Of a DNA stretch of 64,000 nucleotides, positions 6,661-51,334 are shown piece by piece. Where the stretch lies: positions 1 through 64,000 of IMG/VR virus record IMGVR_UViG_3300031951_000001; one strand, written 5' to 3'. The translations under genes and the position numbers were made by a program. How positions within the stretch are numbered: position 1 is the first letter of the stretch; each line of letters starts with the position of its first letter. A model generated the notes under the pieces. That model was not told where the DNA came from. It searched no databases and saw nothing but the letters and a program-made list of their open reading frames with translations.

Positions 6661-6732
6661 ATTTTTCAAAATTACAATATATTTATCTTTCACAAACGCC
6701 CAACAACCCTTTCTTTATAGTTGGTAATATTG

Positions 6733-6780
6733 AACCCTAACATTTTTTTGAAAGAAAAACTGTTAGGGTTTTTCTTTTTT
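6733..6780 (+). terminator. Terminator-like hairpin upstream of smpB
   Basis: AACCCTAACA/TGTTAGGGTT 10-bp stem followed by a T-run. Confidence 0.7.
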
Positions 6781-6783
6781 GAT

Positions 6784-6791
6784 TATCTTTG
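6784..6791 (+). promoter_or_regulatory. Bacteroidota-type -7 promoter element TATCTTTG
   Basis: Matches TAnnTTTG, 8 nt before ATG 6799; same element precedes ATGs 7249, 13623(-), 15220, 22063(-), 24275(-), 47058(-) and 56389. Confidence 0.75.
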
Positions 6792-6798
6792 TCACATT

Positions 6799-7215
6799 AT
6801 GAAAAATTTCGAAGTAAAATTACAGAAAGTTAAGTTTGAATATGACTTCATCGAGACCTATGATGCGGGAATAGTACTTAAAGGAATTGAGGTGAAGGAA
6901 ATAAAGAAAAGGCATTTTTCGTTTATTGATGGATATTGTTATTTCAAAGACGGAGAACTTTTTGTTAAAAATGTCATAATAAATAACGCCGAAGAACCTA
7001 ACAGAGACAAAAAACTTTTGTTAAAAAAACATGAATTAACAAAATTGGAAAAAGAATTAACAAAAGGTTTGACAATGGTACCTTTCAGTTTCTTTACTAA
7101 TGATAGAGGTAGTATTAAATGTACGATAGTTTTGGGACGTAGAAACAAAAGTTACGAAAAGAAACAAAAACTAAAAGAAAAAGATTTAGAAAGAGAAAAA
7201 AAGTTGGAGGATTAA
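6799..7215 (+). CDS. smpB: SsrA-binding protein SmpB (divergent)
   Basis: YDAGIVLKGIEVK..GYCYFKDGELFV..RDKKLLLKKHEL..GLTMVP..KSYEKKQKLKEKD; true start ATG 6799. Confidence 0.85.
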   Translation: MKNFEVKLQKVKFEYDFIETYDAGIVLKGIEVKEIKKRHFSFIDGYCYFKDGELFVKNVIINNAEEPNRDKKLLLKKHELTKLEKELTKGLTMVPFSFFTNDRGSIKCTIVLGRRNKSYEKKQKLKEKDLEREKKLED

Positions 7216-18562: not shown

Positions 18563-18629
18563 TTATTAGGTTTTATAGTAAATATCTTAAACAAAACGCG
18601 AGTTAAGATAGACTATAATTTTTTAGTTG

Positions 18630-18701
18630 TAGTCGGTAGGGGATTCGAACCCCTATGACAAGAATGAAAATCTTGTATCCTAACCCTTAGATGAACCGAC
18701 C
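18630..18701 (-). tRNA. trnE: tRNA-Glu(TTC)
   Basis: Cloverleaf: GGTCGGT/ACCGACT acceptor, CAAGA-TTTTCAT-TCTTG anticodon arm, AGGGG-TTCGAAT-CCCCT T arm; CCA not encoded. Confidence 0.92.
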
Positions 18702-20466: not shown

Positions 20467-20895
20467 TTAAAATTTGTAGTCGAATGTTAGGCCATCATGG
20501 CATACAATATTCTTATCAACGATATCCCTCAATTTATCGGTAGGATAAGGACCCATTAATCTTTTTTTACATTCTTCTACATTATCTTCCATTAGGTCAA
20601 CACCATATGTGGTGGATAATGCTTCTTCTAATGAACATCCACTTCTTTCCATCTTTCGTATAACAATCTCACCCAAAAACTCACCATCACCGCAGCTGTT
20701 ATCAATGAATGTTTTGGTTGGGTCAGTGAATAATGACGGCTCTTGTTCTTCTAACTTATCAATCATTTCAATAACTAAATGATTGGGAGTAAAAACCTCG
20801 GCAGTTTGCTTAATCCTAAGTTTGTCCCTATCAACACCGGACATATAAGTTCGGTTTCTAATGTGATTAATATAATCATTTAACATTATTTTCAA
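20467..20895 (-). CDS. SAM-binding half of an adenine methyltransferase, no catalytic NPPY
   Basis: AEVFTP and IDNSCGDGEFL and YGVDL motifs; ends at IVCHDGL before motif IV. Confidence 0.7.
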   Translation of the reverse strand: MKIMLNDYINHIRNRTYMSGVDRDKLRIKQTAEVFTPNHLVIEMIDKLEEQEPSLFTDPTKTFIDNSCGDGEFLGEIVIRKMERSGCSLEEALSTTYGVDLMEDNVEECKKRLMGPYPTDKLRDIVDKNIVCHDGLTFDYKF

Positions 20896-22063
20896 TATAT
20901 TGAATTTCTAAGTCAGTTAATTCAAATTTTTTGTATAAATCATAATCACTATAATTTGTGTCACTTGATATTTTTGGTATATTTTTGAGTACTTCACCGT
21001 GAAAAAATCCTGAAAACTTACTCAAATTTAAACAATGTTTATATAGTTTTGTATTTAGCAATTTAATCAAAAATTCCGCATCCGCTTTGGAGTCAAATAT
21101 GTGAAAAAAACTGTGTTGAGTTGTATTACAATTAGTATCTATTATAGGATTTAGATATCCACTGTCACTAATTACTACTTTTAATTTGGGATAATTTTCA
21201 GTCATAAAGCTTGAGTAGATTATTTTGCTGGCGTGATATGTTTTATATTTAAAAACATCATCTTTAGTAACCGATAACAAATGTTTTTTGTTAGTTTTAT
21301 GTAATTGACTATTACTTTCAAAGGTATACTTTTCTTTTTTGGAAAAAAATTTATTAAAAATTGAAAAATCAATCGGGTTAGATGAGTTAGGTAATATTTT
21401 ATCTTTAAGACTTATGGATTCTCCACCAATTTTACACAATCCATCATAATTTTTAGACCAATAATAATAACAAGCTTGAGTACCCACACCAATAAAAGGG
21501 GATTCATCGAATATTTTTAGTAATTTTAAACCTCCACTTTCATACATTTTTTTCAAAACTAAGTGATTTGGTGATAAAAAACTTGGTGGAGTTATAAAAA
21601 AAACATTATCGGAAATTTCCATAGATTTTATAATAAATTTGGACCAAAGGTTATTAGCACCGCCTTTACCACCACCCTTACTTTTACCGTTATTATCAAC
21701 TTCTTGATATGGAGGGTTACCAATCACAACATCAAATTTCATTTTAATTTTATCACTTAAAAAATCTTTATGATGGATATTAACATAACCTCTTCTTTTG
21801 AGTTTGTTAATGTATTTTATACGGATTTCATAACCGTAAACTCTAGATTTAGCGTCCAACTCACTATATCCATAAATATCAACCAAACGTCTCACAATCT
21901 CAGAAAGGAATGTCCCTGTGCCCATGCAAGGGTCTAAAAAGTTTGATTTTGAATTTAACCATACATCTGAAGGAATCTCATCTAAAATAAGATTAACCAA
22001 TTCGATAGGGGTAAATACTTCACCTTTAGAAGGGTCTGGCTTCCATTTTTTTAAGTTGTCCAT
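20876..22063 (-). CDS. Eco57I-like (gamma class) N6-adenine DNA methyltransferase with target-recognition region
   Basis: GEVFTP, FLDPCMGTGTF and DVVIGNPPY motifs. Confidence 0.88.
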   Translation of the reverse strand: MDNLKKWKPDPSKGEVFTPIELVNLILDEIPSDVWLNSKSNFLDPCMGTGTFLSEIVRRLVDIYGYSELDAKSRVYGYEIRIKYINKLKRRGYVNIHHKDFLSDKIKMKFDVVIGNPPYQEVDNNGKSKGGGKGGANNLWSKFIIKSMEISDNVFFITPPSFLSPNHLVLKKMYESGGLKLLKIFDESPFIGVGTQACYYYWSKNYDGLCKIGGESISLKDKILPNSSNPIDFSIFNKFFSKKEKYTFESNSQLHKTNKKHLLSVTKDDVFKYKTYHASKIIYSSFMTENYPKLKVVISDSGYLNPIIDTNCNTTQHSFFHIFDSKADAEFLIKLLNTKLYKHCLNLSKFSGFFHGEVLKNIPKISSDTNYSDYDLYKKFELTDLEIQYIENNVK

Positions 22064-22064
22064 C

Positions 22065-24275
22065 TTACAAAGATAAAGTGTTTTCTTGTTTGTTGTAGGA
22101 CGTAATAATAGTGTTCAATAGTTTCTCAGACAAGGCTCCACCGAGGATGAGTTTTTTAACCGTATAAGAGTTAACACCAACTTCATAAATAAGCTCCTCA
22201 CCTAACTTCTTATCCTCAATCATATCAAGTACTTCAATAATGTTGTTTGATTCACAGTTGTTAATTTCAGATATCTCAACAATGTTTTTAACTATATTTG
22301 ATAATACTTCTTTCAGTTTAATTCTGAGGTTATCAATTACAACAGTATTTTGAGAAGAATTGTTTTCAGTCTCTTCATCTACTGACCTTTTAACTTTAGA
22401 TGAATCAATACCTTCAATTTTATCTTTTGATGAGTTATCACTAATCTCAACACCTGTCAATACTTTTACCATTTCTGAATCATTTATAACGGAATCGACA
22501 TTAACTGATTCTGAACCGATACGAATAAGTGAAGTAGAGTTAACTAATTTGTCGGCATATTCATCTAGAACAATCGGAGACATAACACCATTATCATTAA
22601 CAAATATATTTACAGAACGAAGGACTCGTAAAATGCCATCGGTTAATTCTTGAACCTGAACTCGTTCACCTTCATATACCAAATATTCATCAATCGGACT
22701 AATCTCTTCTCTATTAGGGTCAAGTGACAATGATATAACGTTACCAATGGTTTTAGGTTCACCATTATAAGTTAAACCTGGTGTTAATACCCTTGAAACT
22801 TTTTGGGCAACTGACGAATATGAGCCTCTATCAAACATTAACATTACCGTATCGATTTCAGGTATAGAGAAACTTCTTGAAGCCATGTCCTTACTTATGA
22901 AAACAACTTTCTTTCCTTGTCGTTTAGCAATTGCCACAATCTCCTTCGCCTCCTTCTCCGATTCGCGGTTAGAGGTTTCATCGCTATTAAACAATTTAAC
23001 CATATATTGAGGTCCTAATGTATCTTGAACTAGTTTATAAAACTTATTCTGTTCCTTACGATTAGGAGTACTGGCGAAAATCATTGTAACGTCTTTAGGA
23101 GATAACTCATCGGTATTTAAATCAACCAAATAAGTCATTCTACCATTATATGCACCAAATAATGATTTAATCAAATCAGTAAGAATACCTTTAGATTTTG
23201 AAACATCCATTAAAAGTTTATTCCAATCTGTACGGTACTCTTCAGGTATAGAATTAAATCTATCAATAATACCACCAATTGATAACTTTAAAAACTGAGG
23301 AGTTACGATACCACTTACCGATGATATGGATTCAGTTTTATTAGACAAATTGGCTTGTGACGGATGTAACCCATTCTTAACCATAAGCATGTCGGTATAC
23401 GACCAATGGATTATGTTATCACGAAGATTTGTAAGAGGGGCTGATACTTTCTCAAGACCGGTACCTGACATGTAAATATTCAAGTGGCAATCCAAGTACT
23501 CAATCTTATCTAAACTATTAATCCTGTGAGCTCCGAAGTCGGCTTCATCTATAATTGACATCTTTTCATTTGACGGAATATTTCTTAATGTTTCTAGCTT
23601 AGACTGATGTTCGGTCATGTGAAGAGAGGCGGCGACCACAATCATCTTATCACCGTAGTAATCATTGATTGATTCTTCTAAATCAGTAATATCGTCAACG
23701 AATACCATTGAGTCCGAAAACCCTTTAAATTTATAAAAATCAACTTCAAATGACGAGATTGCGGTCAGAACGTAGCTAGGAATAATACAAACCTTAATAC
23801 CTTTTTCAAGATATAAATTTTTAATCAGATTTAAAGACCATAATGTTTTACCGAATCTTGGTGCTAACTCTAAAGCAAAATCAATTTTTTTATATCCCGA
23901 TTGAATTTCTGAGTTGTATTTGTTTAGAAACAAATCACTTACAAAAGATTGAAAAAAACGAGTTTTAAATTCTACACGAGTATCTGAACCTGATTCAGAT
24001 ATTATTTTACTAACAGATGCCACGACTTCATCGTCAGATTTGAATCCACCAACCCATTCACGGGTTACTTTATGATAACCTAAAAGACGCAATGATTGTC
24101 TTACTTCATGGTCTGATAATGTAGTTTCACATTCAAAAATTGTTATAAATTCTTCAGATGAGCCGGTTTTTTGTTGACCAATTCTTTTTTTGGCGGTTTG
24201 TTTTCTAGACTCACCAATTTTGTATCGACCAAGTGACCTGTTGTATTCAGTGGTATAAATGTAGATTGTATTCAT
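22065..24275 (-). CDS. T5orf172/GIY-YIG-like nuclease fused to a superfamily-2 helicase/ATPase (restriction-subunit-like)
   Basis: N-terminal IYIY..YKIG..RIGQQ..REW; Walker A APRFGKT; IIDEAD; MSGT; QKVSR. Confidence 0.75.
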   Translation of the reverse strand: MNTIYIYTTEYNRSLGRYKIGESRKQTAKKRIGQQKTGSSEEFITIFECETTLSDHEVRQSLRLLGYHKVTREWVGGFKSDDEVVASVSKIISESGSDTRVEFKTRFFQSFVSDLFLNKYNSEIQSGYKKIDFALELAPRFGKTLWSLNLIKNLYLEKGIKVCIIPSYVLTAISSFEVDFYKFKGFSDSMVFVDDITDLEESINDYYGDKMIVVAASLHMTEHQSKLETLRNIPSNEKMSIIDEADFGAHRINSLDKIEYLDCHLNIYMSGTGLEKVSAPLTNLRDNIIHWSYTDMLMVKNGLHPSQANLSNKTESISSVSGIVTPQFLKLSIGGIIDRFNSIPEEYRTDWNKLLMDVSKSKGILTDLIKSLFGAYNGRMTYLVDLNTDELSPKDVTMIFASTPNRKEQNKFYKLVQDTLGPQYMVKLFNSDETSNRESEKEAKEIVAIAKRQGKKVVFISKDMASRSFSIPEIDTVMLMFDRGSYSSVAQKVSRVLTPGLTYNGEPKTIGNVISLSLDPNREEISPIDEYLVYEGERVQVQELTDGILRVLRSVNIFVNDNGVMSPIVLDEYADKLVNSTSLIRIGSESVNVDSVINDSEMVKVLTGVEISDNSSKDKIEGIDSSKVKRSVDEETENNSSQNTVVIDNLRIKLKEVLSNIVKNIVEISEINNCESNNIIEVLDMIEDKKLGEELIYEVGVNSYTVKKLILGGALSEKLLNTIITSYNKQENTLSL

Positions 24276-27377: not shown

Positions 27378-28193
27378 ATGAATCTGAAAGAAACAATAAA
27401 AAAAATATTAAGGGAAGAGATGAGACCTTATAAAGCAATGAGAAGAACTAGCTTAATTGATAGTGAAATCGTAAGGTTATTAGATATAGTATATTATGAT
27501 AAAAGAATTTGTGGAAGGTATGAGGACGCGGACATGTTTGTTCGTGTTGTAACTGAGGCTGTGGTCGAGAACCTATACTTCAATACATTTTATATGATGG
27601 ATGATACGTCAGAAGAATGGGAGAAATCAGTTGATTTTATATATGATTATATCAAAGATAGCCACGGAAAAAATCTAAAAGATTACTTCAATAATATGTG
27701 TAATGAACGGGTTGAGATAGATGAATCACTAGTAACGGAACAAATCGAAGATTTTGGAGAAAAAACCAAATTAGAAAAATCAGTAATGAGATTTATTAAT
27801 GCGTATCTTAAAGGTAAAGAACTACCTGAAAACTTTTATGGTGTTGTTGCCGACACATTTGGTGGAAAATACGGAGAAGGTTGTACCATCACATTTTTAA
27901 TGAAAAAACCATTCAAAGTACAAGACTCGGATGATTTACAAGAATTGGGGTTAGATGTAAAAAAATTAATCAAAGATTTTTTTTCAGATGAATTTAGATA
28001 TGGTATTAATATATCAACAACTACCGTCGAACACTATAAAGAATTAAAAAATCGTTTCTTTAATAAACAGAAGGGTGAGTTTACTGAAGGCGAAATAACA
28101 GAAAAGTGCTGGCCAGGTTATACACAAAAAGGAATGAAGACAATGTTTGGTAAAAGATACCCAAACTGCGTAAAGAAAACAAAGAAGAATTAA
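27378..28193 (+). CDS. Modular leader-bearing protein with C-terminal CW..Y....K...G...PNCV motif
   Basis: MNLKETIKKILREE leader; internal LVTE and ITE sites; KCWPGYTQKGMKTMFGKRYPNCVKK tail. Confidence 0.7.
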   Translation: MNLKETIKKILREEMRPYKAMRRTSLIDSEIVRLLDIVYYDKRICGRYEDADMFVRVVTEAVVENLYFNTFYMMDDTSEEWEKSVDFIYDYIKDSHGKNLKDYFNNMCNERVEIDESLVTEQIEDFGEKTKLEKSVMRFINAYLKGKELPENFYGVVADTFGGKYGEGCTITFLMKKPFKVQDSDDLQELGLDVKKLIKDFFSDEFRYGINISTTTVEHYKELKNRFFNKQKGEFTEGEITEKCWPGYTQKGMKTMFGKRYPNCVKKTKKN

Positions 28194-28682: not shown

Positions 28683-28988
28683 TTATTGTTTTCTTAATTT
28701 GGCTCGTTTGATTGTAGGGGAGTTCTTGGAATAGAACTTTTTATACATAGGGTCGATAACATCATCATCTACATCCCTAGTAGAGATGTTCTCAATATCA
28801 AGTTCATCATCTGAATATTCTTCGGGTTCACCCTGATTCATAAAAGAATTTTTATACCACTTTCCACTACCCATAGATGATGGGTCATGGTAGAGATAAT
28901 CATTATCCTGTTCTTCTTCACTTTCTTTTATAATTCTTTTAACGAGTTTAATCAAATCAGATTCAGTTAATCTTACAACTTTTTTCAT
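28683..28988 (-). CDS. Leader-bearing acidic protein
   Basis: MKKVVRLTESDLIKLVKRIIKE. Confidence 0.7.
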   Translation of the reverse strand: MKKVVRLTESDLIKLVKRIIKESEEEQDNDYLYHDPSSMGSGKWYKNSFMNQGEPEEYSDDELDIENISTRDVDDDVIDPMYKKFYSKNSPTIKRAKLRKQ

Positions 28989-29711: not shown

Positions 29712-29787
29712 TTTAACAAGAACATTAATAAGAATGGGGACTCAATTTGGGTCCCCTTTTTTCTGTATATTAGGTATTTATTATAGT

Positions 29788-31644
29788 ATGAATCTCAAAG
29801 AATCAATTAAAAGAATATTAAGGGAAGAAACCGATATACCACTTAAAATTAGAAGGAGGATTTTACCCAAACTAATTGAAAATGCGTTTCAAACGGCATT
29901 GGACGGTAATACAATGTTGAAAACCAAGCCAGGTTCCATGTTACACAAAGCTTCTTTTATAACGTTCGCAAATTTCGTTATTGATGATATGGTTGAGTAT
30001 ATGGAGGACCAAATAAACATGGATGGAAATTCATATTATTATGGTAATGACGATGCTTATATCGAAGAAGTGAGAAACCCGCTCCTTAAACATTATGGTG
30101 ATAGAATAAAAAAGAGATATGATGATATTGTTGGGGGGGATGTTTTTGAATCAGTATTAGAAGAAACAAATATACCACTCCAAGTTAAAAGGAGGATTAA
30201 TGGTGACTCATTGGCCGAATTAATACATGATATTAAAAGTTTAATTGATTCTGGCTACGATGAGTCAGATGCGATATACGATACGGTAAGACAATTTATC
30301 GCTTCAAAACAATTCAAACTTAACAATGATTCAGAACAATCTTATTGGGATTCATACATTGAAGTGGAAGAACCATTAGTTGATTATCTGAAAAGTAAAT
30401 TGAATATACGAGAGTCCGTATTAAGGGAAGAAACCGAAGAATATAAAGTAAAATTGGTTACAAATATAATCTATACTTTATATGATAATATATCATTTAT
30501 AAAACAATCAACTTTCAACGGAAAACCTTTACTTATAATTTATTTTGACTCTGATGATACTGCAGCAAACATTGAGTCGTGGTTTGATGAAAAAATATCA
30601 AGAGATATTGAGGAATGGACTTCAGGAAATATTGTTGTTTGTCCAGATTGGATATTTAATTGGGATTCGAGAAAGAAAAATGCTGATGTGTTTATAAACA
30701 CTGAACTTATAAAATATGATAACTTGGGGAATGTTGTTAATGAGTCAATATTAAGGGAAGAAATGAGCTCAATGATGAGAAGAATATTCAGAAGGGTTGA
30801 CCCCGAAAAGATGGACGGAATATTCGGAGAAGGTCTTGATACAATGACAACAAGATACATTCAGAACCAACATAATTGGCACGCAATGAACTTAGATAAG
30901 TTTAAGTCAGGTATTGTATCATATGTTATTGTTGATTTATGTATGAAATACTCTGACGTATGTTTTGGAGCTGGGGATTTTTACAACCAAGTATGGGAAT
31001 TCTTATTGAGTCATTATTCGGATGTAATGGAAGAAAGATGGAATGAGATTATGTCGGGAGAGGTTAATGAATCGGTATTAAAGGAAGATAGAAAGGCAAA
31101 AGAAACTATAAGTGATTTGGTTAAAGAGTTTGGTTTGATTAAAACTTCAGATATGGTTGGGTTGTCGATATCACAAATTGTTAAAGTAACTAATATACCG
31201 ATTGATTCAGATACCGCCAACCAAATTTTGGTCGAAATGATGAATAACGATGAATTGAAAACCAAATACAAAGATTTTAATATTCACGCAAGTTCAAATG
31301 ACGTGTTTTATTGGGAAGCAATGGTAAAAACAGGACATTTCCATGATGATATGATTGAAAACATAACAGTTGCGGCAACACCATTTTGGGATGGAGTCAA
31401 ATATACACCTGTTGAAATAGAATGGTATACATTACTTAATTATTATGGGGTAACTGTTTATGAAACATCAGGTGAAGGAAATTTTTATAAAGAACTTAAA
31501 CATCAAACAAATTTTGAAAGTGTTGATGAGTTATTGAATTGGTATGAGGAATTCTATTTACCTGAAGTGTATAATATGGTAATGAATACGTTATTACCAA
31601 AAATGCATAAGTTGGTTGATTACGAAATAAAACAAAGAGGTTAG
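29788..31644 (+). CDS. Five-module leader-punctuated protein (polyprotein-like)
   Basis: Start ATG 29788 after TATTTAT; ILREE then four internal ES(V/I)L(E/R/K)E(E/D) junctions. Confidence 0.7.
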   Translation: MNLKESIKRILREETDIPLKIRRRILPKLIENAFQTALDGNTMLKTKPGSMLHKASFITFANFVIDDMVEYMEDQINMDGNSYYYGNDDAYIEEVRNPLLKHYGDRIKKRYDDIVGGDVFESVLEETNIPLQVKRRINGDSLAELIHDIKSLIDSGYDESDAIYDTVRQFIASKQFKLNNDSEQSYWDSYIEVEEPLVDYLKSKLNIRESVLREETEEYKVKLVTNIIYTLYDNISFIKQSTFNGKPLLIIYFDSDDTAANIESWFDEKISRDIEEWTSGNIVVCPDWIFNWDSRKKNADVFINTELIKYDNLGNVVNESILREEMSSMMRRIFRRVDPEKMDGIFGEGLDTMTTRYIQNQHNWHAMNLDKFKSGIVSYVIVDLCMKYSDVCFGAGDFYNQVWEFLLSHYSDVMEERWNEIMSGEVNESVLKEDRKAKETISDLVKEFGLIKTSDMVGLSISQIVKVTNIPIDSDTANQILVEMMNNDELKTKYKDFNIHASSNDVFYWEAMVKTGHFHDDMIENITVAATPFWDGVKYTPVEIEWYTLLNYYGVTVYETSGEGNFYKELKHQTNFESVDELLNWYEEFYLPEVYNMVMNTLLPKMHKLVDYEIKQRG

Positions 31645-32024
31645 ACGATACGTCCGCTTCTTACATCAAAGACCTTATAGTCGGGGAGCATAGATTCAAA
31701 AGCATCAGAGATAAAGTATTTACCATTGGTCATCCAAACAGGGTGAGGTAACATCTCCTCAAAAAACCCATCATACTTATGGCTGTAGTATAAATCACCC
31801 GTTTTACCATCACTAAAAATAGAAAACATCATCATAGGATTACCGGCTGAATCGTATAGGACAATTCTATTACTATCCTCACTATATGATTCAATCTCAT
31901 CAACAATATAAGGAACGATGATATGTTTAAACTTATTGTATAGGTCCTCATACTCAAAATCCATCCAATGACGTTCAAGTTCGGATATAAGATTAAGTTG
32001 TGATTCGGTGATAAGGTATTTCAT
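31641..32024 (-). CDS. Paralogue array member 1
   Basis: MKYLITESQL leader; own TATTTAT. Confidence 0.75.
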   Translation of the reverse strand: MKYLITESQLNLISELERHWMDFEYEDLYNKFKHIIVPYIVDEIESYSEDSNRIVLYDSAGNPMMMFSIFSDGKTGDLYYSHKYDGFFEEMLPHPVWMTNGKYFISDAFESMLPDYKVFDVRSGRIV

Positions 32025-32036
32025 ATAAGATAAATA

Positions 32037-32372
32037 TTACATTGATAGTTCGGCGTCACCTATCAGACCACCGTATACTTTGACATCCGAAGGTTCAATC
32101 TTACCGGAGTTAGAGTTTTCCTCAACAAAATGGGTGAGAATTAATTCGGCCTCATCCTTATCAATAGAAAAGAATTCACATACACTGTTTATAAAATCTT
32201 CGGATATTATTAAAGTACCTGACCTTCTTCTATACCTCATAACGGCGTGTGTATCGTCTAAAGAATAAACAAAACTTATATAACTTGTCCAATAAACCGC
32301 CTCAAGATTTAGTGAATTAATATAATTAAAAATAATACTGTTTAATTTAGATTCGGTGATTAGGAATTTCAT
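32037..32372 (-). CDS. Paralogue array member 2
   Basis: MKFLITESKLNSIIFNYI. Confidence 0.75.
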   Translation of the reverse strand: MKFLITESKLNSIIFNYINSLNLEAVYWTSYISFVYSLDDTHAVMRYRRRSGTLIISEDFINSVCEFFSIDKDEAELILTHFVEENSNSGKIEPSDVKVYGGLIGDAELSM

Positions 32373-32387
32373 ATAAGATAAATATAA

Positions 32388-32699
32388 TTAATACCCAACA
32401 ATCGGACTGGCAACTTCCACATTAATAGATTTTATTCCGAGTTTATTTTCAATCCATTTATTAATTACATTAATGGAGTCCCCATAATCTAAAGAAAAGA
32501 ATTTGCTAACTTCGTCGACCAAGTCGTAGTGTATTGTACACCAGCGGTCTTTCGGATGATATCTAACTTGAGCATATTCATCATCTTCAGAGTTGACATA
32601 GTATAATCTATTCCCCATTTTAATTACAACGAAGTCCTGATTGTCAAGATACTTAAAAACTATACTATCAAATTTAGATTCGGTGATAAGATATTTCAT
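32388..32699 (-). CDS. Paralogue array member 3
   Basis: MKYLITESKFDSIVFKYLDNQDF. Confidence 0.75.
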   Translation of the reverse strand: MKYLITESKFDSIVFKYLDNQDFVVIKMGNRLYYVNSEDDEYAQVRYHPKDRWCTIHYDLVDEVSKFFSLDYGDSINVINKWIENKLGIKSINVEVASPIVGY

Positions 32700-32731
32700 A
32701 TAAGATAAATATATGTAATATTTATTATCAT

Positions 32732-33157
32732 ATGAGTATTAAAGAATCCATAAGAAGAATATTAAGGGAAGAAACTTTACTTAAAACCAATATAAAAGAC
32801 ATGATTTCCAAACATGGATTTTATATAACGTCCAAAATGTTAGGTGGAGTTGATATTATGAATAGTATTCTTAATATAAAAGGTTCACAGGAAGAAATGA
32901 TTTTCATTGTTAAAGCCATAATGGAACATGATGTTGAAGTTTTGGGTAATGTATGTAACTATCAAATAGTTCCGACCATGTACTCATTTAAACTATATGT
33001 AGAAATACCAAAATATTATCCCAACCATTCCGATGATTATTACCCAAACAAACAAAAAACATTTGAGGCGAGAGATTATATATCTGACTTAATAAAAAAG
33101 TTTGGAAATGAAAAGGTGAGAGGATATAATATATACGTTCAGGTAGGAAATTGTTAA
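32732..33157 (+). CDS. Leader-bearing hypothetical protein
   Basis: MSIKESIRRILREE; TATTTAT upstream. Confidence 0.7.
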   Translation: MSIKESIRRILREETLLKTNIKDMISKHGFYITSKMLGGVDIMNSILNIKGSQEEMIFIVKAIMEHDVEVLGNVCNYQIVPTMYSFKLYVEIPKYYPNHSDDYYPNKQKTFEARDYISDLIKKFGNEKVRGYNIYVQVGNC

Positions 33158-33158
33158 A

Positions 33159-33476
33159 TTAGTCAGCTCCGTAATCAGAGAAGATATAGTCAAAATCAAA
33201 ATCAATTTTGGTTTTAATCCATTCACCAATAATATTCAAAGCGGTCTCCAAGTCCAAACTAAAGAATGATGCGACCTCAACAACTAAATCTGAACTTACA
33301 AAACATTCTTTATTAACACGATTTGTGTTGATTGATATATATCCACCACTTTCCCAACTCTCCTTAGAGTCCCAAAAGACATAACCAGAGTGATACTTCA
33401 TTTTATAAAAGTCCTGGTTATTTAAGTAGTCAAAGACAAGATTAGTAAGTTTAGATTCGGTGATAAGGAATTTCAT
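33159..33476 (-). CDS. Paralogue array member 4
   Basis: MKFLITESKLTNLVFDYLNNQDF. Confidence 0.75.
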   Translation of the reverse strand: MKFLITESKLTNLVFDYLNNQDFYKMKYHSGYVFWDSKESWESGGYISINTNRVNKECFVSSDLVVEVASFFSLDLETALNIIGEWIKTKIDFDFDYIFSDYGAD

Positions 33477-33838
33477 TCGGTTTTAACAATTAATCTGTGA
33501 GAAGACCCACTGTTGATAGTGTTTTCTATTTTACCAACCTTAATACCCAAAGTATCACTAACCCATACTTTTATTATCTCTAAACAATCCAAATCATCAA
33601 TAGAGAAGAAATCAGATAATTCCTTAATTAAATCATAATTCACATATACCCAATTCCTAACAAAACCAAAAGAGTTTATGTGATAAACACTAATCTGAGC
33701 GTAAAGGTCGGACTCATTGTTTAAGAAGTATATGTAGTTGTCAAATTTCTTCTTGTTGTCATATACTATAAAATCCTGATTATCCAAATACATAGACACT
33801 GTATTATACAATTTAGATTCTGTGATTAAGTATTTCAT
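33473..33838 (-). CDS. Paralogue array member 5
   Basis: MKYLITESKLYNTVSMYLDNQDF. Confidence 0.75.
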   Translation of the reverse strand: MKYLITESKLYNTVSMYLDNQDFIVYDNKKKFDNYIYFLNNESDLYAQISVYHINSFGFVRNWVYVNYDLIKELSDFFSIDDLDCLEIIKVWVSDTLGIKVGKIENTINSGSSHRLIVKTE

Positions 33839-33855
33839 ATGATAATAAATATGAT

Positions 33856-34179
33856 TTAGTTAGGTATTACCAACGCATAACCTGAACTCGGAGCAACACC
33901 GATGCTTTCGACCTCCATTTTTATGATATTCTCAACCCATTTAACAATAACTTTATCAAAGTCAGAATCTTGTAAAGAAAAGAACATAGAAATTTCATTA
34001 TATAAATCGTAAGATACGTAACACCGACCATCTTTGTCAAATCTTATTTGAGCATATTCATCTGATTCAGAATTGACAAAGTATATGCTTTCTCTATTTT
34101 TAAACCGAATAAAGTCCTGATTGTCCAAATACTGAAGGATAATACTATCCAATTTAGATTCGGTGATTAGGTATTTCAT
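33856..34179 (-). CDS. Paralogue array member 6
   Basis: MKYLITESKLDSIILQYLDNQDF. Confidence 0.75.
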   Translation of the reverse strand: MKYLITESKLDSIILQYLDNQDFIRFKNRESIYFVNSESDEYAQIRFDKDGRCYVSYDLYNEISMFFSLQDSDFDKVIVKWVENIIKMEVESIGVAPSSGYALVIPN

Positions 34180-35244
34180 ATGATAATAAATATAAAGAAA
34201 TTACGAACTAAACAAACTCACTCATTCATCCCCCACTTTGTGGGTCGTTCCGTTCCACTAGCGTTTCACTCCACTGATGTATTCGTTCATTTGTTTATTT
34301 CCTAATTTCTCCCCCATTAATTAAGGACACATATGAGGGGACAATATATTATACCTTATGGTATAATACTGAAAGGTATAAAAGAATACCCTATCGGGTA
34401 TTAATTTGTGGTATACATGTGGTATTATACCTTATCGGGTATAGAGTAACCCACAACCCACACTATATTGTGATTTATATGTAACATTGTAATGTTATGA
34501 TAACAAACTATGGTAAATCCATATTATAGTGTGATTTTAACAGGGTTATATAGTTGTCCCCATATAAGGTGTCAGTGTTGAAGGGGAATATAATACCCCA
34601 CTAAAGTGGTCTCGTTGAAGAATTATTAATGGTCTATTTAGGGTCTATCCTAACACACTACGTGTTTCCCCGCTCCACATACTATAACTTACATTTTTTG
34701 CTGGGGTTTATATACATATAAAAAACTGGTCCTTACGACCCCTACAGAGGGGAAAAATCCCCATTCTAATACCCTACATGACCAATAGTGGTGGTAAATT
34801 GTGGTAAGACATGGTGGTAAAAGGTGGGAGAAAAGTGTCAGAGGGGATTATCCCCATCGTCAAGTGAGACTGACATTTTGACAAAATCAAGTTTTTTAAC
34901 ATAATTAACAAAGAAAAATTACACCTGACATGATGTCATCCCCAACCTGATTGACTTTTTACTACATGTTATTATGTTTAGTTATATGTACCTTAATAAC
35001 TTTAGAACCGATGTTACAAGACACGGGGATGACTACATCGTTAATTATGAGGGTGATGACTCATATGGACATTGTATATACAAACAGTTAGACCTTACGG
35101 GGAGTAACAAACCTATACGACAGAATGTGATGTTATTAACACACTGTCAGATGGGGGGAATAATAGATAACATAAATAAAAAGTCCCCACTCAAAGAGGG
35201 GGACCATGACAACCTGTCCAAAGAGATTAGGGAACACTCGTTAT

Positions 35245-35646
35245 CTATTTTGACATCTTACCTCGAAGGTCAGACAGAAGATAACGATTAAGTTTCTTCT
35301 CCATCTTTCGAGCTTCCACTTCAAAGGGGTTGTTCCAATAACCAAACTCTGCGTTGGCCGAAGCATACTTGGTGGTGACAGGTTGTAAGTAGTGAGTATA
35401 TTCATGAATGAAGGTGGAGGTCAAACGTCCAACTGTCTTACACTCATTCACACATATGCGAATGTGATTAACGTATGGACAATAGAAACCATAGAACCCT
35501 TCCCCATCATTACCATAAGAATATGTTAGGTCGCTACGCTTTCTGTTATTAACCCCCATATTCTCATGACACCATTTAGCACAGAACCGAAGAACTTTCT
35601 TTACTTGTTTCTTGGATAAGGTTGAGGTTTTTGTGTTGCTGTACAT
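35245..35646 (-). CDS. Putative zinc metallopeptidase-like protein
   Basis: FIHEYTHYLQ (HExxH) and NPFEVEAR. Confidence 0.65.
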   Translation of the reverse strand: MYSNTKTSTLSKKQVKKVLRFCAKWCHENMGVNNRKRSDLTYSYGNDGEGFYGFYCPYVNHIRICVNECKTVGRLTSTFIHEYTHYLQPVTTKYASANAEFGYWNNPFEVEARKMEKKLNRYLLSDLRGKMSK

Positions 35647-36499: not shown

Positions 36500-36877
36500 A
36501 TGAAAAAAACAGTTAGACTTACAGAATCAGATTTAGTTAATTTGATTAAGAGAATTATAAAAGAAGAAGAGGGAACGGACTTATCTAATGTTAGAGCCGA
36601 GTTTATAGATTTAATAAAGAGTATGAATTGGGAGTTTAATCCAAATCATAACATGTCAGGGTTTGCGTTTGTCCCTAAAAAAGGGGACATTGGATATAGT
36701 GGGTTTAAGCAAGACAGTTTCAATATGTATATTGGCAAACCATTAATCTTTAATGGTAGTGATGATAATGAATATTGTTATTTAGATAAGAATAATAATT
36801 TTGTTCTCAAGAGATTTGGTAAAAAGTCAACCTCCCCTTTATCATCAGGGATTGGTGGTATTAAGAATTTATTGTGA
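36500..36877 (+). CDS. Leader-bearing protein
   Basis: MKKTVRLTESDLVNLIKRIIKE; TATTTAT upstream. Confidence 0.75.
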   Translation: MKKTVRLTESDLVNLIKRIIKEEEGTDLSNVRAEFIDLIKSMNWEFNPNHNMSGFAFVPKKGDIGYSGFKQDSFNMYIGKPLIFNGSDDNEYCYLDKNNNFVLKRFGKKSTSPLSSGIGGIKNLL

Positions 36878-37246
36878 GATATTAACCCCTCCGATGATAG
36901 TATTGTCGGACCGACCCCTCCCACAAAGAGGGGTTTTTTATTTTCCCGTATATTGACCCCCCATTCTATAAAGGTCCCATATACTGAAAAAAAATTTCTG
37001 GAAAAAATTTGATAAATTGGGAACTGTGTATTATCCTTATACTCTATGAAAAATTTCTTTATTAAATATAAGAAACCTATTGTGGTAACATTGTCTATAA
37101 CCATCCTTCAACTGCTTTTTGGGTTTGACCCCAAGTTTACATTGATTAATATTATTTGGTTATTTCTATAATTTTTTCCCTTCGGGTTGTCAATCCCCCT
37201 ACCCCCTTTTTTGTTTTATGATATATTTATATATAAAATTAATAAT

Positions 37247-37621
37247 ATGAAAAAAGTTATAAGATTAACCGAATCGGATTTAGTTCGTTTAGTAAAACAA
37301 GTTATAAATGAGCAATCTATTCCTGAACCCGAAAAGATTTCCGCTGACCATGCTAAATTTGAGGAATATGTAAAGACAAAATGGGGTTGGAAGGAAGACC
37401 CTTATGCTTCAATTGACTTTGAAGGAGGTGATAACAAGTTTACAATATGTGATGGTCCGTGTGGTTCACTTATTCCTGGTACAGATGTTAATAGTGTTAC
37501 ATGGGATGGAAAAACTAAAACGGTATATGGAACCGTATCATTTGGAGTTGACCCCAAACCAATTTCATGGAGTTATAAATTTAACCAAATGAAAACATGG
37601 TTTGATTCTTCTTTCGGATAA
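37247..37621 (+). CDS. Leader-bearing protein
   Basis: MKKVIRLTESDL..VINE; start ATG 37247. Confidence 0.75.
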   Translation: MKKVIRLTESDLVRLVKQVINEQSIPEPEKISADHAKFEEYVKTKWGWKEDPYASIDFEGGDNKFTICDGPCGSLIPGTDVNSVTWDGKTKTVYGTVSFGVDPKPISWSYKFNQMKTWFDSSFG

Positions 37622-37724
37622 ATCAAATATGATTCATTAAAAATACACCCCCTATTCAATGAGTAGGGGTTTTTTGTTTTCTATAACACGACCCCCTTTT
37701 TTATTCTGATATATTTATTCTTAT

Positions 37725-39036
37725 ATGAGATATATTATAACGGAAGAACAAAATAATATTATTCGTGTCCTACGAAGAATTGACCAAGACCATGATTTGA
37801 TTCAGGATATTGTTGTTGAGGGAATGGAAATGTATTTGTGTGATTATGACCCCTTTAATTATTTTTATGAATTTTTATGTCGGAACTCAGCATTTACTTA
37901 TCTTTTAAATTATTTTGATAACCCACGTCAAGAAGGGTTCATGAAAATGGAAGATTATATGACTGATTATATTAAGGAAAACTTTAAGGAAATGATTGTT
38001 ACCTATTGGGAAGATAATAAGGAATATTGTTAAAAAATTTTTTTCCGTTCCGATTCCCCCTACCCCCTTTTTTATTTTGATGTATTTATTGTTATATGAA
38101 TCTCACAGAATTATCACATGTTTTAACGAAGGTGTATAACAAACTTGGAAACAAGTATCTTGTTGATAATTATATTACCGAGCCGTTTGAGTTTGAGGTT
38201 AAGGTAAAATATGGTGACCCATATGAATATTATAAGTATTATGCCGAGGTTTATAGTATTCCTGATATGCCACATGATTTTAGGTATAGACCTGAAGTTA
38301 GAAAAGAAAAAAAGAAGTATGCCGTTGGAGCCGATATTAGCGTTGTTGGGAGTGATTTTAAAAGTATGATTGAATATGTTGACCCTGAAAAGAAACAGTC
38401 CATTGGTGTTAACTTTATGAATGTTAAAAAATAATTTTTTCCCTTCGGGTTTGTAATCCCCCTACCCCCTTTTTTGTTTGAGATATATTTATCTATATGA
38501 AATACATTCTTACGGAGTCACAGTATGCTGGGCTGATGAAACTAATTAAAAAACAAGAAGAGGATTTGAGTTTTTTGAAAAGTAGTGTGGTCTCTACAAT
38601 CGAACATGACGTAACAGATTTTTTAAACTCCAAGTTTCAAGGTAGATTTGGACACTATGGTTATACGCAATATCCCGTATTTTTTATTTATCCTGATAAA
38701 TTAACCTCTGAACTTACAAAATATAATAGGAGAGAACCGGCTTTGGTTATTGCTTATAATATAAAAAAATCTACAGGCAAAGTTGAAATTAATATTTTTT
38801 GGAATACTAAAGTGAGTTTTAATTATAAAACAGAAGATGGTAAATGGAAAAGAAATAAGTATCCCCAAAATACCATTAAGTGGGATTATATGAATAACCC
38901 TGACGGAGAAGAGGAATTCTTATCTAAATTGGAAAAGACCATTAACGGAAGAATAAGTGAAAGGGCTCAAAACAAAATTATTGATGATTTTGAAAAACTT
39001 TATAGAGAAGAATATCAAACTAGTATATTAAATTAA
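37725..39036 (+). CDS. Three hypothetical proteins (37725..38033, 38096..38434, 38497..39036)
   Basis: Each has its own TATTTAT; leaders MRYIITEEQ, MNLTE and MKYILTESQ. Confidence 0.7.
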
Positions 39037-39106
39037 TTTTCTAAAATTTTTTCCTTCGGGCCGGCAATCCCATACCCACTTTTTTATTTCCGATATATTT
39101 ATATAT

Positions 39107-40325
39107 ATGAAAAAGATAATTAGACTTACCGAATCCGAACTAATCAAAGTTGTAAAACGTATTATTAACGAACAGCATTTTGATGAATTTATGACATCAT
39201 CTGAAACATCTTCAGTCTCTAATGTCGTACAAAATCTTGAAAGAGAAATGGGTGATTACAAAAATAAAATGGATGGATTTTTATCCGATTTGAAATCATC
39301 AGGTGATATTGATTGGAATAGATTCTTGAAGCAAGTTAGAAATCAAACAAGTGAAATATTTCATAAGTATGATGATGAATCTTTATCTAGGGAGGACTCA
39401 TTAAACCTCTTCAATACATTCTCCCAACTCCAATCAAACCTTCTTAATCATTATAAAGGACAATACAGAAATTCTTAATTAATATAATATTATGAAAAAG
39501 ATAATTAGACTTACAGAATCAGATTTAACAAGAATTGTTAAACGTGCTATTAACGAATCGGACCGAGCTTATGGTCATGAAGAAATAGGTAAACTATATT
39601 CTAAATTGGGAGACGATGAGGATGTTGAATTGAGTGACGAGTCTGGCGAATTGTCAGGTGGGATTGTTAAGAAGATTGACTATGTAAAGAATATGCTGAG
39701 AAAAGCCATAAAGAATGAGGATTGGGAAATGGTTAATAGAGCCATGAGTTATCTTAACATGAAATTATAAAAAATAGTTTTTTCATTATATTTATAATAA
39801 AACAATTATAATGGGAAAAAAAATTCGATTGACCGAATCTGAGTTAACCAAATTAATAAAGAAAATGATTTCGGAAGACTTGGAAATGATGGACGTTTCC
39901 TCAGATTCTGATTATTATAAAGCAAGAAAACGAGAAGTATCCATACCCAAAGACGATTTGGCGTTACTAGGTCATATGGCCACAAGGTATTGTGAAAGAA
40001 AAGAAAATCTACCAGATTGTCAAAGAGTTCAGGATTTGTATTCCCGTTATCAATTATTTATGTAAAATTAAAGAAAATGAAAAAACCTATTAGATTAACC
40101 GAATCCGACCTTAATAGAATTGTTAAAAAAACAATTATGGAAATGGGAGGTATGACCAATTCAATTGAGATGTATGACTTCAATAAAAGAAAAATGATAA
40201 ATGGATTACATCAATTGAAATCCTCCATAGATAGTGGAGATAATGAAACTGCATCACATATTGTACAAGTTTTACTTTTAACATTAAACGAACTTGATTC
40301 TTATGTTGATGAAATGAAAAGATAA
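39107..40325 (+). CDS. Four RLTE(S)(D/E)L leader proteins (39107..39478, 39492..39770, 39811..40065, 40077..40325)
   Basis: Shared N-terminal 20 aa, unrelated C-termini. Confidence 0.75.
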
Positions 40326-50555: not shown

Positions 50556-51334
50556 TTGATACCATATATTTTTTCACTTACATTTGTTCAAATGAAAATA
50601 CAATTAAACCCTTTCTCGCAAGTATTGTTGAGTGAATCTCACAAAGAAATTGTTTTGTTACCCTCACCCCAATTACATTATTACGATAAAGTAATGGGGA
50701 AAAACGATTGGACTATCGTCTTATCTATTAAGTTTATTATATGGGAAGTAGGATTGGCTATGGTTAAACCTGCGGAAATTATTAATACCAATAAAAATCA
50801 AGAACTGTAATGAGTAAAATATTAAGTAATTTTAAGAACATACATTTCTTGTGGTTAGTAGGTGTAATTTGTTTTTTGTCATTCTACATTCCTGTTGCTT
50901 GTTTTACAACATATTCAGATTATGTTCCCGAATGGACTCTACCGATATTTGTTTTTTCAACCATGATTCCACTTTGGTTTCATGAGTTTTTATGGAGGAC
51001 CGCTCAAATAGGGTCGGCTTCATATTTGGGGTTTCATGAGTTACATTTTGAGGATAGAAAATGGAAAAAGAAAACTTGTAATCCATTTTACTTTTTGTTT
51101 CACTATTTTTGGTGGTTAAGAAGAAAACCAATATTTTGGTTAATGACTTTAGCAATTATCGGGAGTCTTATTTACGGATATGTTGCTCCCTACGATGAGG
51201 ATGGGATTCACCCATTCACTCCTTTCCACGGTATAAATGCTATTTGGTGGCTTGGAATTATAAAAGATTTTGTTATATTTAGAAACGACGCTAAAGAAGG
51301 ATTAATTAGACATTATAGACACAATTACGAATGA
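50556..51334 (+). CDS. Hypothetical protein (about 50592..50810) and polytopic membrane protein (50810..51334)
   Basis: TACATTTG upstream; several TM helices. Confidence 0.6.

What the first reader, a model, noticed from the sequence alone, without database searches (positions are those of the whole stretch)
29788..31644. Polyprotein-like gene: five modules joined by repeated ES(V/I)L(R/K/E)E sites with a conserved DNA box
Seen: junctions ILREE, ESVLEE, ESVLREE, ESILREE and ESVLKED. At the DNA level (A/G)TATTAAGGGAAGA recurs at 29815, 30418 and 30748, and in separate genes at 27405 and 32759. Modules 1 and 2 both begin ET.IPL..(R/K)RR. Module 5 resembles the stand-alone 32732 protein, and modules 1 and 4 resemble domains in 27378 and 37725. 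Inference: cargo genes are concatenated by recombination at the leader-coding box and separated again by the head protease, a way of shuffling payloads.
Basis: partly seen in the sequence, partly recalled or inferred. Interest (0 to 1): 0.7.

Follow-up and report, generated by a model that had tools for sequence, protein, structure and literature searches.

The report
Leader-linked cargo polyprotein in jumbo phage
A freshwater T4-like jumbo phage joins five small proteins, each of which also occurs elsewhere as a free-standing gene, into one reading frame through kept copies of a shared 14-residue N-terminal leader, and related phages shuffle these modules at the leader-coding DNA box; cleavage by the head protease is likely but untested.

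Summary
ORF 29788-31644 (618 aa) has an N-terminal leader (MNLKESIKRILREE) and four internal junctions, ES(V/I)L(R/K)E(E/D). The 14-nt DNA box occurs five times where 0.09 is expected.

The junctions are shortened copies of the leader. Every module exists elsewhere as a stand-alone gene, usually carrying that leader. Among 327 homologues, module number and order vary. In two syntenic relatives, module gains and losses break exactly at the boxes.

The 42-nt leader box is conserved at synonymous sites, using rare codons, across dozens of jumbo-phage contigs whose capsid protein is only about 78% identical to this phage's.

The genome is a 322-kb distant T4-like myovirus with a gp21-type (S77) prohead protease. 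Every leader and junction carries two hydrophobic-x-Glu motifs, which is that protease's known specificity, and they sit in low-confidence linkers between confidently folded domains.

I therefore read the gene as a concatenated set of capsid-targeted internal ("ejected") proteins. This is a polyprotein variant of the T4 capsid-targeting-sequence system. Fusion and recombination at the box are shown. Packaging and cleavage are inferred.

Similarity to 32732 covers only the leader plus about 25 residues. Payload functions remain unknown.

The parts
29788..31644 (+). Five-module fusion gene, 618 aa. The upstream ATG at 29734 is probably not the start.
   Evidence: Uninterrupted ORF. It is 100% identical in three other IMG/VR contigs. 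There are 327 homologues.
29788..29829 (+). N-terminal A-type leader box, 42 nt, encoding MNLKESIKRILREE with two hydrophobic-x-Glu motifs (LKE|S and LRE|E).
   Evidence: Lake-metagenome contig depth rises 20-35x over this bin, and loose ends fall at 29787 and 29828-29830.
29830..30147 (+). Module 1 (family A, paralogue of module 4).
   Evidence: Profile i-E 2e-39, and 7e-28 to M4. Stand-alone homologues P0168 and P0178.
30148..30165 (+). Junction 1, ESVLEE (preceded by VF).
   Evidence: pLDDT is below 50 in the model of aa 112-330.
30166..30411 (+). Module 2 (helical). It is the first module, carrying a full N-terminal leader, in relatives P0005, P0008 and P0009.
   Evidence: Stand-alone homologues P0110 and P0137.
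30412..30432 (+). Junction 2, ESVLREE (preceded by IR), carrying the DNA box.
   Evidence: It is a recombination breakpoint against L004 and L005. pLDDT is below 50.
30433..30741 (+). Module 3 (small alpha/beta domain). It is absent in the syntenic relatives L004 and L005.
   Evidence: Stand-alone homologue P0111.
30742..30762 (+). Junction 3, ESILREE (preceded by VN), carrying the DNA box.
   Evidence: Low pLDDT (51-73) in both models.
30763..31068 (+). Module 4 (all-alpha, family A).
   Evidence: Stand-alone homologue P0072.
31069..31089 (+). Junction 4, ESVLKED (preceded by VN). The box has one substitution here (AGG to AAG).
   Evidence: Block pLDDT about 71 between two domains above 90.
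31090..31644 (+). Module 5 (helical N-part, beta sheet and a long C-terminal helix). It is the usual terminal module.
   Evidence: About 60 stand-alone homologues of 175-200 aa.
27378..28193 (+). Separate gene with the same A-type leader and DNA box.
32732..33157 (+). Separate gene with the A-type leader and box. It shares a further ~25 residues with module 5.
31641..34179 (-). Six tandem small genes with the related leader MK(Y/F)LITES(K/Q).
36500..40325 (+). Cluster of small genes, six of them with the related long leader MKK.(I/V)RLTES(D/E)L..(I/L/V)(V/I)K(R/K/Q).I.E: 36500, 37247, 39107, 39492, 39811 and 40077. A seventh lies at 28683-28988 on the - strand.
   Evidence: Synonymous sites vary freely, so selection acts on the peptide.

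Best explanation
The gene is an in-frame chain of five small 'cargo' proteins.

Each module elsewhere exists as its own gene, usually headed by a 14-residue leader, MNL(Q/K)ES-I(R/K)(R/K)(I/V)L(R/K)EE. In the fusion the first leader is kept whole. The four internal junctions are copies of the same leader shortened by three residues (ESIRRILREE becomes ES(I/V)LREE).

Shown:
- The modules are separable and shuffled among related phages.
- Gains and losses of modules break inside the leader-coding box.
- The 42-nt box is kept almost identical as DNA across a clade of 270-320 kb freshwater T4-like phages. It therefore serves as a portable patch of homology for in-frame recombination.

Inferred:
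- The leader acts like the T4 capsid targeting sequence. It would bring the protein into the assembling prohead core, and the phage's gp21-type prohead protease would then cut after Glu in the two hydrophobic-x-Glu motifs that every leader and junction carries.
- The polyprotein would thus be resolved into five internal proteins that leave the capsid with the DNA.
- Because cleavage would restore the separate proteins, fusions and module swaps would cost little. That would explain why so many architectures coexist.
For: Fusion and modularity:
- 327 homologues. Each module occurs alone, with its match starting at residue 1-10 of the stand-alone protein, i.e. at or just behind its leader.
- Architectures vary widely: A-A-C-A-B, A-C-A-B, D-A-A-A-B, A-A-B, C-A-D and others.
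- 31 internal full-length leaders were found. Two still carry the Met (P0023, P0034).
- 68 short junctions were found, and none lies in the first 30 aa.

Recombination at the box:
- The syntenic loci L004 and L005 (nitroreductase, fusion gene, 127-aa gene) differ from the window by loss of M1 and M3. The alignment blocks overlap within the boxes.
- Metagenome contigs join J1 to J4 and place M4 before M3. Contig depth piles up 20-35x over the bin that holds 29788-29830.

DNA-level conservation:
- In 58 copies retrieved with a codon-neutral pattern, Ser is TCC in 50/58 and the last Arg is AGG in 54/58. Genome-wide these codons are used 6% and 13% of the time.
- 87 further copies not selected by the pattern show the same bias.
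- Conservation stops at the ATG and at +30.
- The same-codon fraction at identical residues is 0.79-0.85 in the leader against 0.59-0.65 in the body.

Protease reading:
- Peptidase_S77 is present at genome position 117086-117811, beside T4-like portal, scaffold-like and capsid genes.
- S77 is also present in 5 of 5 near-complete relatives that carry the box.
- In the junction logo both Glu are invariant (56/56), with I/V/L two residues before the first and L/I/M before the second.
- The capsid protein's N-terminal 60 aa end in a conserved LINE|A.
- Junctions fall in low-pLDDT linkers between domains with pLDDT of about 80-95.
- [LIV][TKQ]ES is 19-fold enriched at residues 2-10 of this phage's proteins.
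- The related MKK..RLTESDL and MKYLITES leaders are conserved as peptides while their codons vary freely.

T4 precedent:
- A 10-residue targeting sequence on otherwise unrelated internal proteins is removed by gp21 and can carry fused foreign proteins into the head (PMC9026906, PMC3012670).
Against: - There is no direct evidence that any of these proteins is in the virion or is cleaved.
- Hydrophobic-x-Glu is a short motif and common by chance.
- About 34 leader-type genes (roughly 10% of genes) is a large number to package.
- The gene lies about 85 kb from the head genes.
- The payload folds match nothing known, so an 'effector' role is not shown.
- The strong synonymous-site conservation of the A-type box is not required by a purely peptide signal and is only partly explained by recombination.
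- The leaders gave no tblastn match in cultured phages.
Confidence: 0.55

Rival explanations
1. It is an ordinary multidomain protein that stays uncut. The leader or junction would be a conserved amphipathic helix that serves as a linker, or as a docking tag for a common partner such as a chaperone, adaptor or regulator, with no link to the capsid.
For: The junctions are predicted helical. Nothing shows cleavage. The payloads are unknown. The gene lies in a hyperplastic region far from the head genes.
Against: Passive linkers are not normally the best-conserved part of a protein. Here both Glu are invariant in 56 distinct junctions while the flanking modules differ. The same peptide sits at the extreme N-terminus of many unrelated small proteins. 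That pattern suits a signal better than a structural element. A docking-tag version overlaps with the main explanation.
Confidence: 0.22
2. The box is chiefly a nucleic-acid element and the peptide is secondary. It could be a binding site on mRNA for a translational regulator of a gene set, or a DNA site for a dedicated recombination enzyme.
For: Rare codons (TCC, AAC, AGG, ATA) are fixed across diverged phages. Conservation has sharp edges at the ATG and at +30. Same-codon excess is higher in the leader than in the gene body.
Against: The sister leader families are conserved only as peptides. Internal copies are always in frame. Amino-acid variants keep the hydrophobic-x-Glu pattern. No recombinase was recognised next to the locus. 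Frequent homologous exchange between copies could by itself homogenise the DNA.
Confidence: 0.12
3. The polyprotein is cleaved, but by another protease. One candidate is the small HExxH protein at 35248-35646 inside the same gene cluster. A host enzyme is another. Cleavage need not be linked to head assembly.
For: That ORF carries an HEYTH motif and gives a weak match to a putative metallopeptidase family (DUF6782, E 0.0024, below the cut-off). Zincin peptidases process injected polyvalent proteins in other phages (PMC5512222).
Against: The match is sub-threshold. The junction motif fits the Glu-specific S77 class, which is present in every complete relative tested.
Confidence: 0.08
4. It is an assembly or gene-calling artefact, such as collapsed tandem genes or a missed stop codon.
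For: The leader box is a repeat, and repeats can confuse assemblers.
Against: The identical ORF appears in three other IMG/VR contigs and in many lake metagenome runs. Contigs span the junctions without differences (table 8). Dozens of independent homologues show the same kind of fusion.
Confidence: 0.02

Closest known systems
T4 internal proteins (IPI, IPII, IPIII, Alt) with the capsid targeting sequence, processed by the gp21 prohead protease
   Same: A T4-like head gene set including an S77 protease. A short N-terminal leader is shared by otherwise unrelated small proteins clustered in a variable region. The leader ends in hydrophobic-x-Glu. In T4, fusion behind such a leader carries cargo into the head (PMC9026906, PMC3012670).
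   Different: The leader here is longer (14-22 aa) and has two candidate sites. It is reused internally to chain up to five modules into one polypeptide. There are about 34 leader-type genes. The A-type leader is also conserved as DNA. Packaging and cleavage are unproven.
PeSL mobile regulatory cassettes of T4-type phages (Arbiol et al. 2010, PMC2839356; PMC4122927)
   Same: Short repeated sequence cassettes in hyperplastic regions whose mutual recombination produces insertions, deletions and replacements of small accessory genes.
   Different: PeSLs are intergenic promoter-plus-terminator units. This box is coding and in frame, with no conserved sequence upstream. Exchanges therefore remodel a protein rather than a gene order.
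Polyvalent proteins of phages and conjugative elements (Iyer et al. 2017, PMC5512222)
   Same: Several unrelated domains are strung in one polypeptide in variable architectures. These proteins are proposed to be delivered with the DNA and sometimes released by proteolysis.
   Different: None of the hallmark enzymatic domains is present. The modules are small and of unknown fold. Separation would rely on repeated leader-derived sites and a head protease rather than on an embedded peptidase.
Inner-body and ejection proteins of phiKZ-like and SPN3US-like giant phages
   Same: Many head-internal proteins are cut after Glu at short motifs by a gp21-related protease, and their propeptides hold redundant sites (PMC9026906).
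   Different: This is a different phage lineage, with a true gp23-type capsid protein. The site motif differs, and those phages have no reported chaining of cargo through repeated leaders.

Membership tests
T4-type capsid-targeted internal proteins | The phage encodes a gp21-type (Peptidase_S77) prohead protease with a T4-like portal and major capsid protein. | tested here: met
   PF03420 at 87 bits at genome 117245-117670. PHROG head maturation protease, portal and major head protein. The capsid protein matches T4-superfamily phages.
T4-type capsid-targeted internal proteins | A short N-terminal propeptide shared by otherwise unrelated small proteins and ending in (L/I)-x-Glu. | tested here: met
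   N-terminal leader logo from 52 sequences, with L-x-E-S and L-x-E-E. The leader is attached to non-homologous modules. The motif is 19-fold enriched at N-termini.
T4-type capsid-targeted internal proteins | Sequence similarity of the leader to the T4 targeting sequence itself. | not tested
   No T4 leader sequence was fetched. The leaders gave no tblastn match in 50,697 cultured-phage records at E <= 1.
T4-type capsid-targeted internal proteins | The protein is found inside the capsid with its propeptide removed. | not testable with these tools
   There is no isolate and no proteome. The complex prediction gave no verdict.
Polyvalent proteins (Iyer et al. 2017) | Two to 15 domains of disparate, mostly enzymatic activity, including hallmark domains such as the zincin peptidase, ART, methylase-helicase or ParB. 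| tested here: not met
   Five modules, but no Pfam or PHROG family above threshold. No clear structural match, with best Z 7.5 and 6.8.
Polyvalent proteins (Iyer et al. 2017) | Variable domain architectures among relatives. | tested here: met
PeSL regulatory cassettes | An intergenic promoter plus stem-loop terminator unit. | tested here: not met
   Conservation starts at the ATG and ends 42 nt later, with nothing conserved upstream.
PeSL regulatory cassettes | Indels between close relatives have their breakpoints in the repeated cassette. | tested here: met
   blastn blocks overlap within the boxes in L004 and L005. Joints are seen in metagenome contigs.
Viral polyprotein | One ORF cleaved at repeated conserved sites by a virus-encoded protease into separate functional proteins. 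| tested here: inconclusive
   The repeated sites, the protease and the linker location are present. Cleavage was not observed.

The most novel reading that the evidence does not exclude
A 42-nt coding box would do three jobs at once in a clade of freshwater jumbo phages. It would be a patch of DNA homology that lets cargo modules be fused, swapped and deleted in frame. It would be a capsid-targeting signal. It would also be a double cleavage site for the head protease. Together these would form a self-resolving 'cassette polyprotein' system for rapid turnover of ejected proteins, with the box under selection as DNA as well as peptide.
Probability: 0.3. Interest if true: 0.8.

Novelty: new variant of a known kind. 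Interest (0 to 1): 0.62.

Why it matters
If the leaders are capsid-targeting and cleavage signals, this clade shows how a large phage can enlarge and reshuffle the set of proteins it delivers with its DNA. Fusing genes would not lose the individual proteins, because the protease would undo the fusion.

The finding also yields a simple sequence tag that marks about 10% of the genes of these uncultured phages as candidate ejected proteins. That makes hundreds of unknown small proteins sortable for tests such as anti-defence screens.

The leader could also be tried as a natural multi-cargo packaging tag, in the way the T4 targeting sequence has been used.

The nucleotide-level conservation of a coding box across diverged genomes is unusual in itself and would need an explanation.

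Tried and rejected
- Complex prediction of the S77 protease with the junction-4 segment gave no verdict (score 0.24, mark 0.34). It is not evidence either way.
- Foldseek against PDB, and VIA-align wide, on both models found nothing above background. BFVD returned only an uncharacterised phage homologue of module 5.
- Pfam and PHROGs found nothing for the fusion protein or the leader genes. Pfam on 50 leader-bearing ORFs of relatives named only a few domains: cyanophycin-synthase-like N domain x3, DUF2237 x2, GNAT x1 and AAT x1. This is too little to define a functional theme.
- tblastn of both leader types against cultured phages gave no match.
- A full-text search for the motif strings found nothing relevant.
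- The whole-protein alignment A1 placed many single-module segments wrongly and was not used for folding.
- The search for related loci with alignment A2 found no stretch conserved enough to search with. With the single protein it found only identical copies.
- An internal Shine-Dalgarno or internal start inside the box was considered. It was dropped because an ATG follows the box only in M4-type modules and in the 27378 gene.
- A promoter inside or upstream of the box was rejected because nothing is conserved upstream.
- The promoter-like motif RTATTTAT is enriched upstream of leader genes (21/34 against 62/320). It also precedes the terminase, protease, scaffold-like, sheath and baseplate genes, but it precedes a DnaB-like helicase too. 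It therefore cannot be called a late promoter.

Full report
**What the window is.** The 64-kb window is the first fifth of a 322,372-bp IMG/VR virus record rated complete. The record carries a T4-type head gene block:
- large terminase (111959-113719)
- portal (113785-115584)
- a Peptidase_S77 / gp21-type prohead protease (117086-117811; PF03420, 87 bits)
- an acidic scaffold-like protein (119143-120663)
- a gp23-type major capsid protein (120692-122545)

The nearest cultured capsid proteins are only about 40% identical (Microcystis phage Mel-JY01 and Flavobacterium phage immuto). The DNA is found in many lake-water metagenomes. The phage is therefore a distant T4-like freshwater jumbo myovirus. 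By eye, the signal peptides and C-terminal sorting domains suggest a Bacteroidota host, but I did not test this.

ORF 29788-31644 encodes 618 aa. The motifs sit at these positions:
- ESIKRILREE at aa 5
- ESVLEE at aa 121
- ESVLREE at aa 209
- ESILREE at aa 319
- ESVLKED at aa 428

The chance expectation is 0.09. In all six frames of the whole genome, the short junction motif occurs only inside this ORF. The ORF is identical in three other viral contigs, and metagenome contigs span its junctions. It is therefore not an assembly artefact.

**The junctions are leaders.** An exhaustive protein search found 327 homologues, and a second search gave 42 longer ones. Each of the five modules exists elsewhere as a free-standing protein:
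- M1: P0168 and P0178
- M2: P0110 and P0137
- M3: P0111
- M4: P0072
- M5: about 60 proteins of 175-200 aa

Most of these begin MNL(Q/K)ES-I(R/K)(R/K)(I/V)L(R/K)EE. The match to the window's module starts at residue 1-10 of the stand-alone protein, i.e. at or just behind its leader.

In multi-module relatives the full leader occurs internally 31 times. Two of these still carry the initiator Met (P0023, P0034). The short form ES(V/I)L(R/K)EE occurs 68 times and never within the first 30 residues. A profile alignment shows that the short form is the leader minus three residues. M2 is internal here, but it is the first module, with a full N-terminal leader, in P0005, P0008 and P0009.

**Modules are shuffled, and the breaks are in the box.** Clustering the segments gives many architectures:
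- A-A-C-A-B (this gene)
- A-C-A-B
- D-A-A-A-B
- A-A-A-B
- A-C-B
- D-A-B
- C-A-D
- C-I-F-A-D
- and others

The M5 type usually comes last. Two relatives keep the same neighbours (nitroreductase upstream, a 127-aa gene downstream) but encode 512-aa and 413-aa versions. The flanks are 95% identical at the DNA level and the modules 86-89%.

The alignment blocks jump from the N-terminal box straight to M2, and from junction 2 straight to junction 3. At each jump the relative's sequence aligns to both boxes of the window. Lake-metagenome contigs add a join of junction 1 to junction 4 and an M4-before-M3 arrangement. Contig depth rises 20-35-fold over the bin that holds 29788-29830, with loose ends at 29787 and 29828-29830. 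These contigs were laid at 85% likeness, so some belong to related phages.

**The box is conserved as DNA.** I scanned IMG/VR with a pattern that back-translates ESIRRILRE(E/D). The pattern leaves the Ile, Arg, Leu and Glu codons free and restricts Ser to TCN. It returned 57 loci holding 58 distinct copies. Codon choice in them is almost fixed: GAA TCC ATA AGA AGA ATA TTA AGG GAA. TCC is used in 50/58 and AGG in 54/58, although these make up 6% of Ser codons and 13% of Arg codons in this genome.

Conservation begins at the ATG and ends 42 nt later, with nothing conserved on either side. Another 87 copies in the same loci were not selected by the pattern, and they show the same bias:
- TCC 27/35
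- AAC 26/31
- ATA 75/86
- AGG 36/50

For gene pairs whose bodies are 35-70% identical, the same-codon fraction at identical residues is 0.79-0.85 in the leader and 0.59-0.65 in the body. Five near-complete carriers (269-309 kb) have capsid proteins only 77-79% identical to this one, so the copies are not recent clones.

The related leaders MKK..RLTES(D/E)L... and MK(Y/F)LITES... vary freely at synonymous sites. That difference shows that the peptide itself is under selection. The A-type box carries an extra DNA-level constraint or is homogenised by exchange.

**Why the head protease is the best candidate.** The junction logo from 56 distinct short junctions reads [I/V/L]-x-E-S-[V/I]-[L/I/M]-x-E-E, and both Glu are invariant. 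The N-terminal leader reads M-N-L-x-E-S-I-R-R-I-L-R-E-E. [quoted passage not shown] The L/I preference at P3 is from my own knowledge of the field.

In T4, a 10-residue N-terminal targeting sequence is the only part shared by otherwise unrelated internal proteins. It directs them into the scaffolding core, is removed by gp21, and can carry fused foreign proteins into the head (PMC9026906, PMC3012670).

Further points fit this reading:
- The S77 protease is present here and in 5 of 5 complete box-carrying relatives.
- The capsid protein's conserved 60-residue N-terminus ends in LINE followed by Ala, in the position expected for a gp23-type maturation site. This is an inference.
- [LIV][TKQ]ES is 19-fold enriched at residues 2-10 of this phage's proteins.
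- About 34 genes carry such N-termini, and two thirds of them lie at 26-45 kb of the window.

**Structure.** AlphaFold models built with module-level alignments cover aa 310-618 (mean pLDDT 90.6) and aa 112-330 (mean pLDDT 78.1). They show separate, confidently folded domains:
- M2: helical
- M3: alpha/beta
- M4: all-alpha
- M5: helical N-part, then a beta sheet, then a long helix

In both models the lowest-confidence stretches outside the chain ends are the junctions. That is where a protease could reach. No fold search gave a match above background, so the payload functions are unknown.

**What is not supported.** With the leaders removed, only M1 and M4 are paralogous. No module has another paralogue in the genome. 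The 32732 protein shares only the leader and about 25 further residues with M5. The similarity to 27378 is the leader alone, and 37725 is not significantly similar. Cleavage and packaging are unobserved, and the complex prediction gave no verdict.

**Rivals.**
- An uncut multidomain protein with a conserved docking helix.
- A box that is mainly an RNA or DNA element.
- Cleavage by another protease, for example the small HExxH protein at 35248-35646.

The first two leave observations unexplained: the invariant Glu pattern, the N-terminal position of the leader, and the peptide-only conservation of the sister leaders.

**Verdict.** The architecture and its recombinational origin are solid. The capsid-targeting and cleavage mechanism is the best-supported inference, at about even odds. 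The closest known things are the T4 targeting-sequence internal proteins, the PeSL shuffling cassettes (PMC2839356) and polyvalent proteins (PMC5512222). This case differs from all three: a coding leader box is reused in frame to chain and reshuffle cargo, and the box is kept as DNA across a clade. I class it as a new variant of a known kind.

Noticed in passing
window 6721-7212 (+): The phage encodes an SmpB (tmRNA-binding protein) homologue (PF01668, E 1.6e-32). ARAGORN finds no tmRNA gene anywhere in the 322-kb genome.
   Followed up: partly
window 28101-28190 (C-terminus of the 27378 gene): A Cys-flanked motif, CW.GY..KG.K..FGK..PNC, matches proteins of many T4-like cyanophages at 70-88% identity over about 30 aa. 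In S-SCSM1 it lies inside a gene annotated 'virion protein'.
   Followed up: partly
window 35248-35646 (-): A small ORF with an HEYTH (HExxH) motif gives a sub-threshold match to a putative metallopeptidase family (DUF6782). It sits in the middle of the leader-gene cluster and is conserved in the syntenic relative L004.
   Followed up: partly
upstream of many genes, e.g. window 29771-29780, 32715-32724; genome 111935, 117066, 119100: The promoter-like motif RTATTTAT lies 12-40 nt upstream of 83 of 354 genes. It precedes 21 of 34 leader genes, and also the terminase, protease, scaffold-like, sheath and baseplate-wedge genes and a DnaB-like helicase.
   Followed up: partly
window 40330, 41238, 44761; genome 66050, 126638: By eye, a second recurrent N-terminal motif of the form E(E/R)E(K/R)..I..L(H/Y)....EQ appears in several larger proteins. 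Some of these also have the IITEE-type N-terminus.
   Followed up: no
window 18629-18701; genome 90379, 94254, 94344, 98942: The phage carries five tRNAs: Glu-TTC, Arg-TCT, Leu-TAA and two with anticodon CAT. They read GAA, AGA, TTA and ATG (or ATA if one is an Ile-lysidine type), which are the codons that make up most of the leader box.
   Followed up: no
relative G002 (IMG/VR record holding L014), 31291-34973 and 233494-237944: This 269-kb relative has two S77 proteases and two major capsid genes. The second capsid gene is only 36% identical to the window phage's.
   Followed up: no
window 31912-32100: Lake-metagenome contig depth rises about 5-fold over the 5' end of the MKYLITES-type gene and the 3' end of its neighbour. 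That leader region is therefore also repeated at the DNA level in the community.
   Followed up: no
window 51331-53145 and 62841-63998 (+): Large secreted-looking proteins with Bacteroidota-style signal peptides. By eye, the first has a C-terminal gliding-motility / type 9 secretion sorting domain, which hints at the host phylum.
   Followed up: no
window 20467-24275 (-): A 736-aa protein with a weak helicase C-terminal match lies next to two ORFs that look, by eye only, like DNA methyltransferases. All sit just upstream of the leader-gene region.
   Followed up: no
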